The notes under the pieces are model-generated. The model searched no databases and had not been told where the DNA came from. It saw nothing but the letters and a program-made list of their open reading frames with translations. From NCBI GenBank assembly GCA_965644495.1, contig CBFFSA010000003.1, positions 434,001-498,000 of the forward strand: a stretch of DNA of 64,000 nt, written 5' to 3'. Origin of the DNA: Perkinsela sp. CCAP 1560/9. Lineage: Eukaryota; Protista; Euglenozoa: Kinetoplastea. How positions within the stretch are numbered: position 1 is the first letter of the stretch; every line of letters begins with the position of its first letter. Positions 4,939-55,220 of the stretch are shown here, piece by piece. A program made the position numbers and the translations under genes.

Positions 4939-7191
4939 ATGTCCGCTAATCCAGCAACTGAGACCGCGCCCGTCCCGGAGATTCCCATCCCAGCGGACAT
5001 GTCCCATCCCACCCCCGAAGGTGTGCCCCTTGGCACGGAACCCACCACCTCCGCCACACTCTATGTCGGCAACATCACCCCGGAGATCAGCGAGCCCGCC
5101 TTGTTTGCGTTCTTCTCCAAGCACAGCCCGGTGACCTCCGTGCGGGTGTGTCGGGACCTTAACACACAGGCCTCCCTGGGGTATGGCTACGTGAATTTTT
5201 CCTGCACCGAGGACGCAGAGAAGTCGCTGAACGCGCTGAACTACGTCCCCATTCGTCCCGGAGCTAAACCGATGCGGCTGATGTGGTACGAGCGTGACCC
5301 GACGAAGCGGAAATCGGGACACGGGAACATTTTTATTAAGAATCTCACTAAGGATGTCGACGACAAGAGTTTGGCGAAAATCTTTGCAAAGTTTGGTGCA
5401 ATCACCTCCGCGAAAGTCGGACGTACCCGCAAAGGAGAAAGTATGGGTCACGGATTCGTGCAGTTTGAAAATGATTCCGAGGCAGATACGGCTATTGCGG
5501 AAATGAATGGTGCGAAGATCAACGACCTTGAACTGTACGTGGGTCCTTTCAAATCGACCAAAGAGCGTTTCGGTGAACAGGATGGATCCTACACGAACGT
5601 GTTTCTTCGTAATCTCAAACCAGATCTCACCACTGATGCTTTGAAGGAATATTTGTCGAAATTCGGAAAAGTTGTCAGCGTCTCTGAACTCACCGAGAGT
5701 AAACAATTCAAAGCCAAGTTTGGCTTTGCGAGCTTTGAATCCCACGAGGAGGCTCTCAAGTGCGTTGAGGAACTCAACGACAAAGTCATTGAAGAAATCG
5801 GCGGTGACCTCACCTTGTTTGCCGGTCGTGCTATGAAAAGTGCGGAACGTATGAAAGCCGTTCAGTACGCTGCCACAGAAGACGGCAAGGGGGCGGAATT
5901 CCTCGAAGGCAATGTCTACGTCAAAAATATCCCCGATGGCTTCACCACCGAAAAACTCACTGAACTTTTCTCCAAAATCGGCGAGGTCAGCAGTGCCGTC
6001 GTGATGCAGGACACCACCACCGGGCTCTCCAAAGGCTACGGCTTTGTCCGATTCAAATCCCGTGAGGACGCCGACCGTGCAATCTCCGTCCTGAACGGCA
6101 AACTGGTCGCTGGCAAACCCCTCCTCGTTACCCCCTTCCTTAACCTCCAACAACGTCGTCGGTACCGTGAGACCCAGGCGACCGGGGGGGCCAGCACCGC
6201 GGGGCTGCCTACCGCACTACCCACGTACCCCGGGGCCCCTGGCCACCCACGATGGCCGCTCCCTCATGCCTACCCCACGGCCTCGGCCCACCCCGGGCTT
6301 CCCCCCTCTGGGATCCCTCCATTGGCTGGACCCTACGGCACCGCCTCCCCGAGTTACTATGGTGGCAGTCCGTATCCAGCCGTAATGAGTGCAATGGGGA
6401 GAGGGGGAGGCGTCGGGGGACCGGGAGGGTATCCCCCACGAGGAGGTATGGTCCCCGGCCGGGGAATGGGAGCCCCAGGGGGCGTAGCCGTACCCGGGGG
6501 AACCCCCGCAACCGGGGCGAACCCCATGGGAATGGCCCCGGCTCGTATGCCCTATGGTTACCCTCCCCGGGTGCCTCCGAGTGCGATGCCCGGGATGGGA
6601 ATGCACCCCCCGGGAAATCCCCATCTGGGCGTGAATCCGAATTTGGTGAATCCCCGACCTCATCCATTCTCCCAGGCAGGGATGATGATGCAAGGAGGGG
6701 GACGAGGGGTAGGAGTTCCCCCGGTAGGGGCTGGAGGCGTTCCAGCAGGAATGCTCCCGCCCGCAGGTGGGGTGGCAGGGCCACAACCGCATTTGATGCG
6801 GCCGAAGATGCCTGCGATGGCTCCGGCGGTGCCCCAGCGACCCGGGGTACAGGGGATGCCGACTTCGGCGTATGGGAGTGGTCCACAGGCGCCGGCACAA
6901 CCCAGTGTGACGCCCCCACCCCCCGTGAAAAGCATTCCCGGGTTTCAGGGACTACCACCGTTGACGTCCTCCGCGCTCGCGGCGATGAGCGAAGAGGAAC
7001 AGAAAAATGCGTTAGGCGAGCGATTGTATGCTCGAATTGAGTCGCAAGAGCCGGAGCAGGCTGCGAAAATCACAGGGATGCTGTTAGAAATGGACACGAC
7101 CGAGATTTTGAATGTCCTGGAGGATCCTAACATCTTACAAAGTAAACTCTCAGAGGCATTGAACGTGCTGCGGGCGTACAAGAGTGCGTAG
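4939..7191 (+). CDS. PABP: Polyadenylate-binding protein (4 RRMs, long Pro/Gly/Met linker, MLLE domain)
   Basis: RRMs LYVGNI/IFIKNL/VFLRNL/VYVKNI, 'SLGYGYVNF', C-terminal 'QKNALGERLY...AAKITGMLLEMD'. Confidence 0.97.
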   Translation: MSANPATETAPVPEIPIPADMSHPTPEGVPLGTEPTTSATLYVGNITPEISEPALFAFFSKHSPVTSVRVCRDLNTQASLGYGYVNFSCTEDAEKSLNALNYVPIRPGAKPMRLMWYERDPTKRKSGHGNIFIKNLTKDVDDKSLAKIFAKFGAITSAKVGRTRKGESMGHGFVQFENDSEADTAIAEMNGAKINDLELYVGPFKSTKERFGEQDGSYTNVFLRNLKPDLTTDALKEYLSKFGKVVSVSELTESKQFKAKFGFASFESHEEALKCVEELNDKVIEEIGGDLTLFAGRAMKSAERMKAVQYAATEDGKGAEFLEGNVYVKNIPDGFTTEKLTELFSKIGEVSSAVVMQDTTTGLSKGYGFVRFKSREDADRAISVLNGKLVAGKPLLVTPFLNLQQRRRYRETQATGGASTAGLPTALPTYPGAPGHPRWPLPHAYPTASAHPGLPPSGIPPLAGPYGTASPSYYGGSPYPAVMSAMGRGGGVGGPGGYPPRGGMVPGRGMGAPGGVAVPGGTPATGANPMGMAPARMPYGYPPRVPPSAMPGMGMHPPGNPHLGVNPNLVNPRPHPFSQAGMMMQGGGRGVGVPPVGAGGVPAGMLPPAGGVAGPQPHLMRPKMPAMAPAVPQRPGVQGMPTSAYGSGPQAPAQPSVTPPPPVKSIPGFQGLPPLTSSALAAMSEEEQKNALGERLYARIESQEPEQAAKITGMLLEMDTTEILNVLEDPNILQSKLSEALNVLRAYKSA

Positions 7192-51171: not shown

Positions 51172-51246
51172 CATGATGATATCGATGATATTTCCCTGCT
51201 TATTTGAAGCAAGCATGATATTCGACGCATACTCATATCTGAGAAT
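51172..51246 (+). repeat. ~75-bp dispersed direct repeat, copy 1 (copy 2 at 55144-55220)
   Basis: Shared core 'GATGATATTTCCCTGCTTATTTGA.GCAAGCATGA.ATTCG...ATATCTGAGAAT'. Confidence 0.85.
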
Positions 51247-51334
51247 ACAGTCCAGACCACAGAGTACACCGTGAGAGCTTTTGACCTAATTCCTTCGGCA
51301 ATCGACAGATCTTGAGGGGCTGCGGGTGGGGATT

Positions 51335-51397
51335 CGGTGCGGTCTCGGCGCGGCCTCGGTGCGGTCTCGGCGCGGCCTCGGTGCGGTCTCGGTGCGG
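51335..51397 (+). repeat. 11-bp tandem array CGGYGCGGYCT (~5.7 copies)
   Basis: Seen directly; the same unit recurs at 53863-53906. Confidence 0.92.
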
Positions 51398-51733
51398 CGT
51401 ACGCACTTATCTCAGTGCAAGAACAGAAAGTGTGGAATGGGTGGGGAGTGGGGGCAGGGGCGTAGAAGGCGAAGGCGAGGCTACATGAATCCGGACATAG
51501 TTGGAGAGGAAATCTCAATGAAATTTACGGTTATTAACAAATCTGTACGGTTAGTAACAAATCTACTAAAAGGAATATACGCGTGATTTTACCAAAGAAA
51601 GGGGTAACCCTGATACACTCATTTATAACTACAAATTTATCACGAGCCTTGAACGTAAATATTTTTCTTTTTGGTGTACACCCCCTAGGCCCACCGGAAG
51701 CCTACCCCCCCCCCCGCCCATAAGTAAATAAAA

Positions 51734-52719
51734 TTACTTAGCACACTTATTTGATTTTTTAGGCTCATAGGCAACGCCATCTATATTTTCCTTAAGCCAC
51801 TCTCTGCAGCTTTCGATACCATCAACTACACCGCACCCTTTACTACATAAACACTCACCTTCATCACTTGTAGATTTCAAACTTAAATTTATAATCGAAT
51901 CGAAAACATACTGCGGCTGAGTAGCCAGCAGTCCATACGTAACTACAGAAACAATTTGAAAAGCGTCTCTGACCCATGATATATCATGATCAGTACCATG
52001 AAGAAAACGAAACTTGTCGAAATGTGCAAAACGTCGCTCAATTCGAGAGCGAATCAGTGAAATCCTTTCATTCACACGTTTTTCATCATCGGTGAGACCA
52101 CAGCCAGTTTTCTTATAGGGTACAAGGCAGTGCGCACAACCTATGTACCCTAGATCGGCCAAGAACATTTCATCTTCGTGGTGAGTGAACAGCGGAGTAC
52201 GATGCACACTAGTACTCATATAAATTTTGGCATCATGCATGCTGCCAACAACTGGTCCGCGAAAGAAGAATGGAACTCCGGCCAGAGTTAGCCAAACTTC
52301 CACCTTGAAGCAGTGCTGCCGGTGCTTTCCCGAATAGGTGCTACCTCGGGTGGTTCCATCAGGTGCTTCTCTCGGTTTTCTTGCACGACATGGGATCGTC
52401 GTGACGTCCAGCATGCAGGTTACGTCAGATAACCATGATACTCCCTGGGTAAACCGTGGCTCGGGGTTCATGAACAGGGGTGAACGGCACAGCTCACACG
52501 AGTAAAATCATCCTGGAGAGTCCGAATTGAAATCAACGGGGCGTCCGGTGAGAGCCACGCCCTTTGGACATCGTACAACTGTTCCCATGCGCAATTCAGA
52601 GAACAGATGCACAATGATGACTGACCACGACGGTAATCAGTCTCCGTAACATCGGATCCATGCACACGTCGGAGCTCGTTGTAGAACTCCCGCACCTGTG
52701 CTGCCGAGATGCCAAACAT
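51734..52719 (-). pseudogene. PIF/Harbinger-type DDE transposase (DDE_Tnp_4); catalytic part 51734-52471 open, N-terminal part out of frame
   Basis: 'CMLDVTTIP', 'YSGKHRQHCFK', 'GSMHDAKIY', 'FLADLGYIG', 'VPYKK', 'EKRVNERISLIRSRIERRFAHF'. Upstream ORF 52468-52719 overlaps by ATGA; one frameshift near 52500-52510 would join them. Confidence 0.85.
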
Positions 52720-53023
52720 AGAGAGAGAATGAAACGATTGAAGGAAATTTCGATTTAAAAGCAGAATAAGTAGGGTTGTATTTTATTATTGGGCGGAAAT
52801 ATTTTAGCATGTACTTGTAATTAGTGGAATGAAATAACAATTAGTGGAATGAGCTAGTAATTAGGGAAAATCGAACAGAACAGTAGTGGGGACGAAATTG
52901 CCTTACCTTACCTTGCCTTCTAACTTGCCTTATTACCTTCTTTACCATCTCATTACCGTCTTACCTTCGTAAGACCTTGTTACCGTCTTACCTTCGTACT
53001 TTCTCGTCTCATGTGGAGCACAC

Positions 53024-53668
53024 CTATAAGGCCGGGAAACGAATCGAATGATCCGAAGTAGCGATCGGGCTGGCCACCGAATACGAGGGAGGATTGTATT
53101 CTGGGGGTGGTGGTGAGACTTCAGCCCCGCTGCTTGATTCATTTTGACGAGAAGCGGTCCGCTTGCGCTGACGCCACTGCTGGCAAACGAGAGACCGCTT
53201 CCCGGAAAAAGAGCACCGCACGCTGTCCACAAAGTCGCCCACTTCACCTTGGTGATGGGGGGAAAAGAGAGGGTCTTTTTGAAGGTACGCTTCAAGGTCG
53301 GCGGTTGCCTCTCCAAGGAAGTACGCGCTCCGGGGGCGGACGCTCAGAAGCAGATGGCCCCGGCGGTCAACCAAGTGGAACAGGACGCGAGTCACGATGC
53401 ACGAGGTCAAGTTAATGCCACACACAGAGCGTGCAACATGTAGGAAGTTGTCCATCGTGCATGACACGCGCCCTGCGAGTTCATCCACTTTACTACTGAG
53501 CTCTGCATTGCTTATCTCCAAACGTGGCTTGGAGAAAACGTCGGGCCTCTTCGTAAAGACCCGGATCGTCGAAGCGTTGATGACATCGAAGAATTTGTCT
53601 TCGGCACTTGTCTCAGGCTCAAGAGAAGTCAATCGCTCTTGCAATGCGTCATTGCTCTCGATAGTCAT
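53024..53668 (-). CDS. Transposon ORF2, 214 aa, unknown family
   Basis: ATG-initiated, same strand as the transposase, inside the TIRs, preceded by pyrimidine tract/branch/AG; no Myb/SANT Trp spacing recognised. Confidence 0.55.
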   Translation of the reverse strand: MTIESNDALQERLTSLEPETSAEDKFFDVINASTIRVFTKRPDVFSKPRLEISNAELSSKVDELAGRVSCTMDNFLHVARSVCGINLTSCIVTRVLFHLVDRRGHLLLSVRPRSAYFLGEATADLEAYLQKDPLFSPHHQGEVGDFVDSVRCSFSGKRSLVCQQWRQRKRTASRQNESSSGAEVSPPPPEYNPPSYSVASPIATSDHSIRFPAL

Positions 53669-53862
53669 AAAAATTTAGGAGCAAAATTTACAGCAAAAGA
53701 AAACCGCGCTGTTGTTAGTAAAAAGGATGAAAATGATTCAGAGAAAGAAACAAAGAAAAATATAGCTAGAAGCGTACACCGAATTCGAAATTCCACTTAA
53801 AAATAAAAACAAATGTAAACTTTTGGCTGTTTTTCTATCTCTCCCCATCGAAAATACGAACC

Positions 53863-53906
53863 GCGGTCTCGGTGCGGTCTCGGTGCGGTCTCGGTGCGGT
53901 CTCGGT
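53863..53906 (+). repeat. 11-bp tandem array CGGTGCGGTCT (~4 copies)
   Basis: Seen directly; same orientation as 51335-51397. Confidence 0.92.
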
Positions 53907-55143
53907 CGAAGTACCCGCAGTCCCTCTCTTGAAAAAGTAGAACGTTTTCCGTTTTTTTTTCATCCGAGGAGACCCCTAGACCCCCTGTGTACACTCCCAA
54001 AGTTGGGTTTTTTCCCTTAAAAAATAGTTCTTTTAGACGAAAAAAATGAAAAAAATCATCAGAAAATACTTATTTGAAGGGACAAACCAGTACCCTGTAT
54101 GACCCCCCTTTACACGCTGCATAATTTAAATGCGTTTGGTCACTAAATTCATACAATTCAGAACCTGACGCTGATAGGGACTTTGCTTAATCACCAAAAA
54201 AGCTTTTTTAATGGCCACCCGAAGCTCTTACTCATTTTCAGGCTTTAAAATTTCTTTAACTAAATTTCTTTTTGGACTGACGAGTGATTTCAAGAGTTCG
54301 CATTGAGCTATCTTGTGCGTAATTTGGGGGTTTTCGTTCGGGGGCGTGTTGGAATAAGATTCTCAGTAGATTTAACAGGGGTTTTCCGCAATAGCATGTT
54401 GATGAGATACGGTTTTATAGCAAGAAACACCTAAAAATTGAACTTTTCGCGAAATATTTCAGAATAATTCTCATTTTTCCATGTTTTCTTTTTACCCGTT
54501 ACTCATGTGGGGGGCTCCACATGTGAAAAAAATACGGGAAACATTCCACTTTTTTAATATCTGTCGAATGCCAAAGGAATTAGGTCAAAAGCTCTTACGG
54601 TGTACTCTGTGGCCTAGGGGGCTGACAATGTGGCCTGGACTGTATGCTTACTGTGCTCTCGTTTAATAGAGACCCCCTGAGACCCCCCCTTTAATAGAGA
54701 GAGAAAATAAAAGATCATGATAAGTTGAAAAATGACGAAGCATGATAAATAATCCTCCCACTCAACCTTCATCTTTTCCCCTCCTGAAAATGGTTATCTT
54801 TATCTCTATCTCTGGACACCTATTGCTCCCAAAAATTGACACAGTGACAAGAACGTTATAAAACTAATTTGTATCTTAAATATTATACCTGTAAAATCTA
54901 AAGAGGCGGGTGACAGTAATGCACACATCATATGCGTCAGGGGGAAAGGGAGAAAGCGACTCCCGTCAAACAATAAAGATGCTGCTTCACATGCAAGGCT
55001 ATGGCTTGCATGTTAGCATTTTTTTATTCCAGACCCTTTTCACCCCTCCCATTTTATTATGAACAAAAGCCGAAAAAGTGTCCATAATAAGGGGCGTCAC
55101 AGTATTACAACTTTTAGTAAATAACTTTTAAACACCTTCCAAT

Positions 55144-55220
55144 CATGATGATAAAGATGATATTTCCCTGCTTATTTGACGCAAGCATGACATTCGCTAC
55201 ATAATAAAATATCTGAGAAT
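55144..55220 (+). repeat. ~75-bp dispersed direct repeat, copy 2
   Basis: Matches 51172-51246. Confidence 0.85.

What the first reader, a model, noticed from the sequence alone, without database searches (positions are those of the whole stretch)
51246..54644. TIR-bounded Harbinger/IS5-type DNA transposon with an unrecognised partner ORF in a kinetoplastid-type genome
Seen: inverted termini (TACAGTCCAG...CTGGACTGTA plus a 54-bp IR, 51/54 identical) enclose a DDE_Tnp_4-type transposase and a 214-aa ORF; these are the only credible minus-strand genes in 64 kb. Established: trypanosomatid genomes are known for retroelements and essentially lack cut-and-paste DNA transposons. Harbingers usually carry a Myb/SANT partner and TAA/TTA TSDs, and ISL2EU a YqaJ nuclease. 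Here ORF2 resembles neither, and the ends parse as TA|CAGT (Tc1/mariner-like) or AT|ACAG. Inference: a new PHIS-lineage element, possibly acquired horizontally.
Basis: partly seen in the sequence, partly recalled or inferred. Interest (0 to 1): 0.8.

Follow-up and report, generated by a model that had tools for sequence, protein, structure and literature searches.

The report
Nested kinetoplastid PHIS transposon, 4-bp TSD
The reported inverted repeats belong to a small non-coding transposon, and a separate two-gene cut-and-paste transposon of the Harbinger/IS5 (PHIS) kind has inserted into it; this second element is a broken copy of a large family in a kinetoplastid genome, with its own 14-bp ends, an unusual 4-bp target duplication and a partner protein with no detectable relatives outside this transposon lineage.

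Summary
The sequence features are real, but the reported boundaries are wrong. The TACAGTCC inverted termini (51246 and 54644) belong to a low-copy, roughly 780-bp MITE with about 106-bp TIRs. Other copies of that MITE run uninterrupted across the point where the genes sit here.

The gene-bearing element is 51314-53926 (2613 bp). It has its own 14-bp TIR, GAGGGGCTGCGGGT, and is flanked by a 4-bp duplication, TCTT. That terminus occurs 289 times in the 21-Mb genome and 0 times in the control. Of 27 paired copies, 19 have a perfect 4-bp TSD, with consensus ANNT.

The window copy is defective: a 4-bp deletion frameshifts its DDE_Tnp_4 transposase. Copies with both ORFs intact exist elsewhere (L002, L054).

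ORF2 (213 aa) sits upstream of the transposase in at least four subfamilies at about 46% identity. It has no Pfam or PDB match, no fold match, and only 19 lineage-restricted hits among 1.84 billion proteins.

The host is a kinetoplastid (KMP-11 is present). A relative with GAGGGG ends exists in Bodo saltans. Recent horizontal acquisition is not supported.

The closest described group is Pangu within PHIS (ANT 3-bp TSD, second ORF without motifs). The 4-bp ANNT TSD fits none of the six described PHIS groups. Other first readers of this scan noted the same family on other pieces of this genome.

The parts
51246..51309 (.). Left TIR of the outer, non-coding long-TIR MITE (TA|CAGTCCAG end). This is the host element, not part of the transposase element.
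   Evidence: The terminus TACAGTCCAGGCCACA occurs about 10 times in the genome. This arm lacks about 22 bp compared with the right arm and with other copies.
51310..51313 (.). Left copy of the 4-bp target-site duplication, TCTT.
   Evidence: Paralogous uninterrupted MITE copies read ...ACAGATCTCGAAAAAG... once across this point.
51314..51327 (+). 5' TIR of the PHIS element, GAGGGGCTGCGGGT.
   Evidence: With the flanking T, the terminus gives 289 genome hits at up to 1 mismatch and 0 in the control.
51334..51398 (+). Subterminal tandem array of 5.8 copies of an 11-bp unit (GCGGTCTCGGT type). Candidate protein-binding sites.
   Evidence: TRF. The same unit lies on the same strand at the other end.
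51734..52719 (-). DDE_Tnp_4 transposase pseudogene. A 4-bp deletion near 52495 splits it into 83-aa (52468-52719) and 245-aa (51734-52471) frames.
   Evidence: The intact 329-aa homologue is L002:1869-2858(-). The DDE triad is D106, D190, E229 in L002 numbering.
53024..53668 (-). ORF2, a 214-aa all-helical accessory protein with no detectable relatives outside this transposon lineage. Intact in this copy.
53863..53906 (+). Second subterminal array of 4.0 perfect copies of the same 11-bp unit, in the same (direct) orientation as the left array.
53913..53926 (-). 3' TIR of the PHIS element, ACCCGCAGTCCCTC on the + strand. One mismatch to the consensus.
53927..53930 (.). Right copy of the 4-bp target-site duplication, TCTT.
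53931..54644 (.). Remainder of the outer MITE: the rest of its left TIR (53931-53976), its interior, and its right TIR (about 54510-54644, ending ...CTGGACTGTA).
   Evidence: Aligns continuously with L053, L050, L051 and L052.

Best explanation
The interval holds two transposons, one nested inside the other.

(1) The outer element is an old, low-copy MITE of about 780 bp with about 106-bp TIRs and TA|CAGT ends. It occupies 51246-51313 plus 53931-54644.

(2) A 2613-bp two-gene cut-and-paste element of the PHIS (PIF/Harbinger-ISL2EU-Spy/IS5-like) superfamily inserted into the left TIR of that MITE. It occupies 51314-53926 and duplicated the target TCTT.

Shown about the inner family:
- It has 14-bp TIRs, GAGGGGCTGCGGGT.
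- Its 4-bp target-site duplication has consensus ANNT.
- It carries arrays of an 11-bp unit at both ends on the same strand. The unit differs between subfamilies.
- It has two same-strand genes: ORF2 (about 213 aa, helical, no relatives outside this lineage) followed by a 329-aa transposase with an N-terminal helical region, a DDE_Tnp_4 core (D106/D190/E229) and a C-terminal Cys motif.
- The window copy carries a 4-bp deletion in the transposase gene.

Inferred mechanism:
- The transposase recognises the invariant TIR and makes cuts staggered by 4 nt at ANNT.
- ORF2 plays the part of the Harbinger Myb-like partner. It would bind the subfamily-specific arrays and recruit or import the transposase through its conserved basic patch and C-terminal ...RFPxL motif.
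- The window copy could move only with transposase supplied in trans by copies with both ORFs intact, such as L002 (G000:C1:1737934-1740492) or L054 (G000:C1:788227-790774).

The family is long-resident in kinetoplastids rather than recently acquired.
For: Boundaries:
- 12 or more other copies start exactly at window 51313/14 and end at 53926, without the TACAGT repeats.
- The terminus gives 289 genome hits against 0 in the control.

Nesting:
- The outer IR resumes at 53929.
- With the insert removed, the outer element aligns continuously to L053 (819 columns, 81%), L050, L051 and L052 across the junction. These paralogous empty sites read ...ACAGATCTC(G/A)AAAAAG....

TSD:
- 19 of 27 paired copies have identical 4-mers on both sides, and 7 more differ at one base.
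- The four copies whose TSD starts with T instead of A have T on both sides (window, L002, L054, L057). The outermost base is therefore duplicated target, not element.

Transposase:
- Pfam DDE_Tnp_4 at 65-70 bits against a cut-off of 24.8. D, D and E are invariant.
- dN/dS is about 0.13 between subfamilies A and B.
- A 4-bp deletion is present in the window copy.
- Both ORFs are intact in L002 and L054.

ORF2:
- It lies upstream of the transposase in subfamilies A, B, C and D at 44-50% identity, with no stops.
- Between subfamilies dN is about 0.5 with dS at or above 1.6.

Subterminal repeats: they lie on the same strand at both ends, and never inverted, in subfamilies A, B and C, in Bodo saltans and in the JGI contig. 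The unit differs in each.

Host and residency:
- KMP-11 is present.
- The Bodo saltans homologue P0032 sits in a 2006-bp unit with GAGGGGGGGG...CCCCCCCCTC ends and an upstream 189-aa ORF.
- The genome has 60 DDE_Tnp_4 matches.
Against:
- ORF2's role is pure inference. There is no DNA-binding domain hit, no fold match, and the complex prediction gave no verdict.
- The upstream ORFs in Bodo saltans and the JGI contig are not detectably homologous to ORF2 (hhalign E 0.3-0.4).
- A 4-bp TSD cannot be formally separated from a 3-bp TSD plus an element-borne T with an obligatory T in the target. Three of the non-A termini do not covary.
- Copies of subfamily A differ by about 4%, so this subfamily may no longer be active.
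- The transposase model has moderate confidence (pLDDT 65), and its matches to DDE transposases are weak (E at or above 0.015).
Confidence: 0.85

Rival explanations
1. One reading: 51246-54644 is one Harbinger-type element whose ends are the TACAGTCCAG repeats and the 54-60-bp IR.
For: The IR is real and encloses both genes.
Against: - The TACAGT terminus occurs only about 10 times in the genome and is never otherwise found with these genes.
- The genes occur in many copies bounded by GAGGGGCTGCGGGT with their own TSDs.
- Other copies of the IR-bearing element are continuous where the genes sit here.
Confidence: 0.02
2. The element is an ordinary PIF/Harbinger or Pangu member. ORF2 is then a Myb/SANT-like DNA-binding protein diverged beyond recognition, and the apparent 4-bp TSD is a 3-bp TSD plus a conserved flanking base.
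For: - The two-gene layout with an upstream accessory ORF and DDE_Tnp_4 is the Harbinger/Pangu plan (PMC4482050).
- Pangu has an A..T-type TSD (ANT) and a second ORF without motifs.
- ORF2 is all-helical with a conserved basic patch.
- The invariant T next to the TIR could belong to the element.
Against: - No Myb/SANT/MADF hit appears in any of 14 family members at E up to 10, and no fold match.
- The 3 bases next to the TIR are NNT, not ANT.
- The base 4 positions out covaries on both sides in 4 of 4 T-initial cases.
Confidence: 0.25
3. The element was acquired recently by horizontal transfer, from a bacterial IS5-type element or from another eukaryote.
For: - The 4-bp palindromic-type target resembles bacterial IS5 (my own knowledge of ISfinder).
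- There are weak hits to NCBIfam IS5 models.
- Trypanosomatids lack such elements (PMC8101967).
Against: - IS5 model scores are far below the cut-offs (23 against 140 bits).
- No relative was found in 185,579 prokaryotic species through conserved-motif patterns.
- Four or more old subfamilies are present with saturated dS, and 289 termini.
- A Bodo saltans relative has the same terminal motif.
- Metagenome relatives reach only 26-37% identity.
Confidence: 0.07
4. The island is an assembly chimera or a contaminant join.
For: No read evidence could be obtained.
Against: - The insertion has a perfect TSD, and both elements are multi-copy in the same genome with precise ends.
- Flanking host genes are collinear on one strand.
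- The ENA assembly ERZ24900291 is the same genome (100% identity over 8.9 kb at another locus). It is therefore not independent.
Confidence: 0.02

Closest known systems
Pangu group of the PHIS superfamily (Han et al. 2015, PMC4482050)
   Same: - DDE_Tnp_4-type transposase with no extra recognisable domain.
- A second ORF with no known motif.
- Short TIRs (11-40 bp) that start with G/A-G.
- An A...T-type target duplication.
- Length of 2.5-3.5 kb.
- Reported as the eukaryotic group nearest to bacterial IS5.
   Different: - The TSD here is 4 bp (ANNT), not 3 bp (ANT).
- Pangu was reported from plants, fungi and animals, not from Euglenozoa.
- Phylogenetic membership could not be tested because no reference sequences were available.
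Canonical PIF/Harbinger (e.g. Harbinger3_DR, PIF, Pong/mPing)
   Same: - A two-protein system: a DDE transposase plus an upstream accessory ORF.
- Subterminal repeats.
- Many MITE derivatives that share only the ends.
   Different: - The TSD is 4-bp ANNT instead of 3-bp TWA.
- The accessory protein has no detectable Myb/SANT domain.
- The transposase is short (329 aa).
- There is no Plant_tran (PF04827) hit.
ISL2EU
   Same: - PHIS-type DDE core.
- Two ORFs.
- Target with conserved outer A and T (A|AT|T).
   Different: - No THAP domain in the transposase and no YqaJ nuclease ORF.
- In the 4 of 4 T-initial cases the outer base is duplicated with the target, which gives 4 bp rather than 2 bp.
Bacterial IS5 family
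   Same: - Weak similarity to DDE_Tnp_1 and IS5 models.
- A short palindromic-type target. The IS5 subgroup makes 4-bp duplications (from my own knowledge of ISfinder).
   Different: - Scores are far below the NCBIfam cut-offs.
- Two genes instead of one.
- Eukaryotic host, and no prokaryotic relatives found.
Merlin elements of Bodo saltans and Perkinsela (PMC8101967)
   Same: - Cut-and-paste DNA transposons in non-trypanosomatid kinetoplastids.
- Often antisense to neighbouring genes.
   Different: - A different superfamily (IS1595-type DDE, 8-bp TSD).
- Merlin copies there are few and degenerate. This family has hundreds of termini and copies with both ORFs intact.

Membership tests
PHIS superfamily (PIF/Harbinger-ISL2EU-Spy; DDE_Tnp_4) | Transposase catalytic core matches DDE_Tnp_4 above the curated threshold | tested here: met
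   PF13359 scores 69.8 bits (window fragment) and 64.9 bits (L002) against a cut-off of 24.8.
PHIS superfamily (PIF/Harbinger-ISL2EU-Spy; DDE_Tnp_4) | Conserved D..D..E triad | tested here: met
   D106, D190 and E229 are invariant across 8 sequences, including the Bodo saltans and metagenome relatives.
PHIS superfamily (PIF/Harbinger-ISL2EU-Spy; DDE_Tnp_4) | TIRs plus a short TSD at multiple independent insertions | tested here: met
   14-bp TIR with 289 termini. 19 of 27 pairs have a perfect 4-bp TSD.
PIF/Harbinger group | 3-bp TSD, TWA (TTA/TAA) | tested here: not met
   The TSD is 4 bp with consensus ANNT, for example TCTT, TAGT, ACTT, AAAT, ACAT.
PIF/Harbinger group | Accessory ORF with a Myb/SANT-like domain | tested here: not met
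   - No Pfam hit in 14 members at E up to 10.
- No PDB sequence hit.
- Foldseek best E 0.2, and VIA-align best Z 7.5 to a de novo designed bundle.
- A very diverged three-helix domain cannot be excluded.
ISL2EU group | 2-bp AT TSD (A|AT|T), THAP in the transposase, YqaJ nuclease ORF | tested here: not met
   No THAP or YqaJ hits. The middle dinucleotide of the TSD is variable, and the outer base covaries on both sides.
Pangu group | 3-bp ANT TSD | tested here: not met
   The three bases next to the TIR are NNT. The A lies four bases out.
Pangu group | Two ORFs: a transposase with only a DDE core and a second ORF without known motifs | tested here: met
   Definition taken from PMC4482050.
Pangu group | Transposase clusters with Pangu reference transposases in a phylogeny | not testable with these tools
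   No Repbase or ISfinder reference sequences are reachable. The protein libraries searched carry no TE classification.
Bacterial IS5 family | Match to an NCBIfam IS5 equivalog above its cut-off | tested here: not met
   Best match is NF033581 at 23.4 bits against a cut-off of 140. No prokaryotic locus was confirmed.
Tc1/mariner-type MITE (outer element only) | TA target and CAGT-type TIR starts, mobilised by a DDE_3 / DD(34-37)E/D transposase | tested here: inconclusive
   All six inspected ends read TA|CAG(T/C)..., and the genome holds at least 150 DDE_3 matches. No empty site of the MITE and no matching autonomous partner was examined.

The most novel reading that the evidence does not exclude
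The GAGGGG-ended elements are an undescribed seventh group of the PHIS superfamily, native to kinetoplastids. The group would be defined by three features: a 4-bp ANNT duplication, same-strand 11-bp subterminal arrays, and a fast-evolving helical accessory protein with no relatives outside this lineage that replaces the Myb/SANT partner. Copies with both ORFs intact (L002, L054) would still be able to mobilise the many MITEs in trans.
Probability: 0.45. Interest if true: 0.7.

Novelty: new variant of a known kind. Interest (0 to 1): 0.55.

Why it matters
Kinetoplastid genomes are textbook examples of genomes with retroelements and no cut-and-paste transposons. The only exception in the papers I could search is a few degenerate Merlin copies (PMC8101967).

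This kinetoplastid genome carries a large PHIS family. It has 289 termini, at least four subfamilies, many MITEs of 46-1600 bp, and at least two copies with both ORFs intact. The genome also has at least 150 Tc1/mariner-type transposase matches. The absence in trypanosomatids therefore looks like a loss, not an ancestral state.

PHIS groups are defined by their target duplication (PMC4482050). A 4-bp ANNT duplication combined with a non-Myb partner would extend that classification. It would also give a test case for how the stagger of target cleavage changes within one transposase fold.

How a two-gene element is expressed in a genome of unidirectional gene arrays (all long host ORFs in this window lie on one strand), which in kinetoplastids are transcribed polycistronically (general knowledge, not tested here), is an open and testable question. 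The window copy and at least two other copies lie antisense to the local host genes.

Tried and rejected
There is no read-level check of the junctions, of expression or of trans-splicing.
- ORF2 identity: no usable result came from Pfam, NCBIfam, a PDB profile search, ESM Atlas features, Foldseek against PDB, the Atlas structure search (TM at most 0.36) or VIA-align wide (top Z 7.5 to a designed helical bundle, within the background for helical proteins).
- ORF2-transposase complex prediction: no verdict (score 0.00, the supplied alignments were not used). This is not evidence for or against binding.
- hhalign of the ORF2 profile against the upstream ORFs of the Bodo saltans and JGI elements: not significant (E 0.32 and 0.41).
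- The ENA assembly ERZ24900291 as an independent species or strain: rejected. It matches G000 at 100% over 8.9 kb. Loci L031 and L032 are therefore own-genome copies, and no presence/absence polymorphism test was possible.
- Transposase fold search: only weak matches to DDE transposases (ISCth4, Mos1; E at or above 0.015) from a model with pLDDT 65.
- Orientation of copies relative to host gene arrays: two of the four flanks with long ORFs are clearly antisense and the others are ambiguous. The sample is too small to claim a bias.
- Considered and rejected: a 2-bp TSD with element ends T...A (the ISL2EU-like parse A|NN|T). The non-consensus outer base covaries on both sides in 4 of 4 T cases.
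- Phylogeny against named PHIS clades: not attempted, because no reference sequences are available.
Full report
**What is at the coordinates.**
- The inverted repeats are arms 51254-51313 / 54556-54615 (60 nt, 92% complementary) and 51242-51261 / 54629-54648.
- The 245-aa minus-strand ORF 51734-52471 matches Pfam DDE_Tnp_4 (E 2.7e-19).
- The 214-aa ORF 53024-53668(-) has no Pfam hit.
- All long host ORFs in the window lie on the + strand.

**The boundaries are different.**
- The outer inverted repeat does not stop at 51313. It resumes at 53929-53976, which pairs with 54510-54557 (pair I2).
- A genome-wide search with the interval and a re-alignment of 30 loci show that the gene-bearing part recurs many times. 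It always starts at window position 51313/14 and ends at 53926, and never carries the TACAGT repeats.
- At those positions the element has its own TIR: GAGGGGCTGCGGGT on the left and its complement on the right, with one mismatch in the window copy.
- The 15-mer terminus occurs 147 times forward and 142 times reverse in the 21-Mb genome, and 0 times in the control.
- With 51314-53930 removed, the remainder aligns without interruption to other copies of a small non-coding element: L053 over 819 columns at 81%, and also L050, L051 and L052. Those copies read ...ACAGATCTC(G/A)AAAAAG... once across the junction.

The interval is therefore a nested pair. A roughly 780-bp MITE with about 106-bp TIRs and TA|CAGT ends (about 10 termini in the genome) received an insertion of a 2613-bp two-gene element into its left TIR.

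**Target-site duplication.**
- The insert is flanked by TCTT on both sides (51310-51313 and 53927-53930).
- Of 27 copies where both ends could be paired, 19 have identical 4-mers on both sides, 7 differ at one base and 1 differs at two.
- The consensus is ANNT.
- I tested the alternative parse, a 2-bp TSD with element ends T...A, as proposed for ISL2EU (A|AT|T; PMC4482050). Among termini whose adjacent base is not the consensus, the four with T (window, L002, L054, L057) have T on both sides of the element. The outermost base is therefore duplicated target.
- Three further exceptions (G, C, T) do not covary and are best read as later substitutions.
- A 3-bp duplication plus an element-borne T cannot be strictly excluded. 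It would still require a T in the target, so 4 bp is the simpler reading.

**Coding capacity.**
- The window copy's transposase is broken. A 4-bp deletion near 52495, relative to L002, splits it into 83-aa and 245-aa frames.
- L002 (G000:C1:1737934-1740492, 96% identical in DNA) has an intact 329-aa transposase and a 213-aa ORF2.
- L054 (G000:C1:788227-790774, another subfamily) has 365-aa and 221-aa ORFs.
- The transposase has an N-terminal helical region, the DDE_Tnp_4 core with invariant D106, D190 and E229, and a conserved C-terminal CxCxxGC motif.
- It scores far below the cut-off on the NCBIfam IS5 models and has no THAP or Plant_tran hit.

**ORF2.**
- It lies upstream of the transposase, on the same strand, in every subfamily examined, at 44-50% amino-acid identity and without stops.
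- The transposases of the same pairs are 60-76% identical, so ORF2 evolves faster.
- Between subfamilies the transposase has dN/dS of about 0.13, and ORF2 has dN about 0.5 with dS at or above 1.6. Within subfamilies the ratios approach 1, as expected for decaying copies.
- An exhaustive profile search of 1.84 billion representatives gave only 19 hits. Most are short fragments and none has known relatives.
- Pfam on 14 members at E up to 10, PDB sequences, ESM Atlas features, and three structure searches with an AlphaFold model (pLDDT 70.8, seven helices) gave nothing above background.
- It is therefore not a recognisable Myb/SANT protein or a YqaJ nuclease.
- Its conserved features are the motif HxVDRRGHLL, a basic patch SGKRSRxCxxWRQRKR and a C-terminal ...RFPxL.

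**Architecture shared across lineages.**
- Both ends carry short tandem repeats on the same strand, never inverted. The window has 5.8 and 4.0 copies of an 11-bp unit.
- Subfamilies B and C have related but different units. The Bodo saltans and JGI-metagenome relatives have unrelated AT-rich units in the same arrangement.
- The 14-bp TIR is identical in all own-genome subfamilies. The distant relatives keep the GAGGGG start.

**Host and distribution.**
- KMP-11 (PF03037) is present full-length at E 3.8e-43, and in none of the 14 control genomes. The host is therefore a kinetoplastid.
- The best named relative of the transposase is an unannotated Bodo saltans protein (P0032, E 1e-76 to the profile). 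It sits in a 2006-bp unit on CYKH01001496.1 with GAGGGGGGGG...CCCCCCCCTC ends and a 189-aa upstream ORF.
- A JGI metagenome contig has the same plan.
- The ENA assembly that supplied most protein hits is the same genome, so it is not independent evidence.
- No prokaryotic relative was confirmed. Other metagenome relatives reach only 26-37% identity.
- The genome contains 60 DDE_Tnp_4 matches and at least 150 DDE_3 (Tc1/mariner-type) matches.
- These facts argue for long residence and diversification in free-living kinetoplastids, not recent horizontal acquisition.

**Comparison with known groups.** Han et al. 2015 (PMC4482050) define six PHIS groups by their TSD:

| Group | TSD |
|---|---|
| PIF/Harbinger | TWA |
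| ISL2EU | A\|AT\|T |
| Spy | none |
| Pangu | ANT |
| NuwaI | CWG |
| NuwaII | C\|TNA\|G |

- Pangu is closest in plan: two ORFs, a second ORF without motifs, TIRs starting AG/GG, and a position near IS5.
- None of the six groups has a 4-bp ANNT duplication.
- Membership by phylogeny could not be tested without reference sequences.
- Searches of the paper library found no report of PHIS elements in kinetoplastids. The 2021 Merlin paper states that only retrotransposons had been reported before it.

**Mechanism.**
- Shown: the ends, the TSD, the coding capacity, the defect in this copy, and the existence of copies with both ORFs intact and of MITE derivatives.
- Inferred: the transposase binds the invariant TIR and cuts the target with a 4-nt stagger. 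ORF2 binds the subfamily-specific 11-bp arrays and recruits or imports the transposase, by analogy with the Harbinger Myb-like partner.
- The complex prediction gave no verdict, and no read data could be obtained.

**Relation to other notes of this scan.** After I had reached this reading I found that other first readers had flagged the same family on other pieces of this genome: GAG ends, a 4-bp TSD, same-orientation subterminal arrays and an ends-only 64-bp derivative. These notes agree with my results but are not independent evidence.

**Verdict.** This is a real and well-defined transposon, but a defective copy with boundaries different from those reported. The family is a new variant within the PHIS superfamily, in a lineage where such elements had not been described. 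Interest is moderate to high for transposon and kinetoplastid genomics.

Noticed in passing
G000 genome-wide (e.g. G000:C3:268232-268654, G000:C1:1066138-1066557): At least 150 matches to Pfam DDE_3 (Tc1/mariner/IS630-type transposase), many in open frames of 280-400 aa without stops. This kinetoplastid genome is rich in a second cut-and-paste superfamily.
   Followed up: partly
window 51246-51313 + 53931-54644; also L053 (G000:C3:1020216-1021373), L050, L051, L052: A low-copy MITE family (about 10 termini) with about 106-bp TIRs and TA|CAGTCCAGG ends. The window copy's left TIR lacks about 22 bp that the right TIR and the other copies have. No autonomous partner was identified.
   Followed up: partly
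window 51172-51238 and 55144-55210: A 67-nt direct repeat (85% identical) flanks the nested pair at 3972-bp spacing. It is probably pieces of yet another repeat family in this 9-kb TE island.
   Followed up: no
L032:5959-6714 (own genome, subfamily D copy): A MITE with about 126-bp near-perfect TIRs (arms 5959-6081 / 6595-6714) sits in the 3' end of a transposase gene and extends its called product (P0004, 384 aa).
   Followed up: no
window 53669-53760 (- strand, upstream of ORF2): A TACTAAC-like branch motif followed by a pyrimidine-rich tract and AG lies just upstream of the ORF2 start. In a kinetoplastid this looks more like a spliced-leader acceptor than the cis-intron another note proposed. 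The ORF2 N-terminus is conserved from the same Met in all subfamilies, so no upstream exon is needed.
   Followed up: partly
L067 (Bodo saltans CYKH01001496.1, locus 703-2708): A gene annotated only as 'unnamed protein product / DDE Tnp4 domain-containing protein' lies inside a 2006-bp TIR-bounded unit with an upstream 189-aa ORF. This appears to be an unreported PHIS element in the published Bodo saltans assembly.
   Followed up: partly
G000:C2:1437622-1438080, C1:1051174-1051632, C36:59821-60279, C77:11183-11641, C5:814490-814948: A second group of DDE_Tnp_4 matches lies in open frames of about 397 aa and scores lower (about 40 bits). These are probably the other Harbinger-like families, with 3-bp TSDs and Cys-rich partners, that other readers of the scan noted.
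   Followed up: no
ENA assembly ERZ24900291 (L031 = G000:C10:686829-695775): This public assembly matches G000 at 100% over 8.9 kb, so protein hits labelled 'ena' come from the window's own genome.
   Followed up: yes
G000:C1:2089941-2090020, C3:970448-970527, C5:306881-306953, C6:~732535-732595: Ends-only derivatives of 46-80 bp consist of little more than two GAGGGG TIRs, and some still have 4-bp TSDs.
   Followed up: partly
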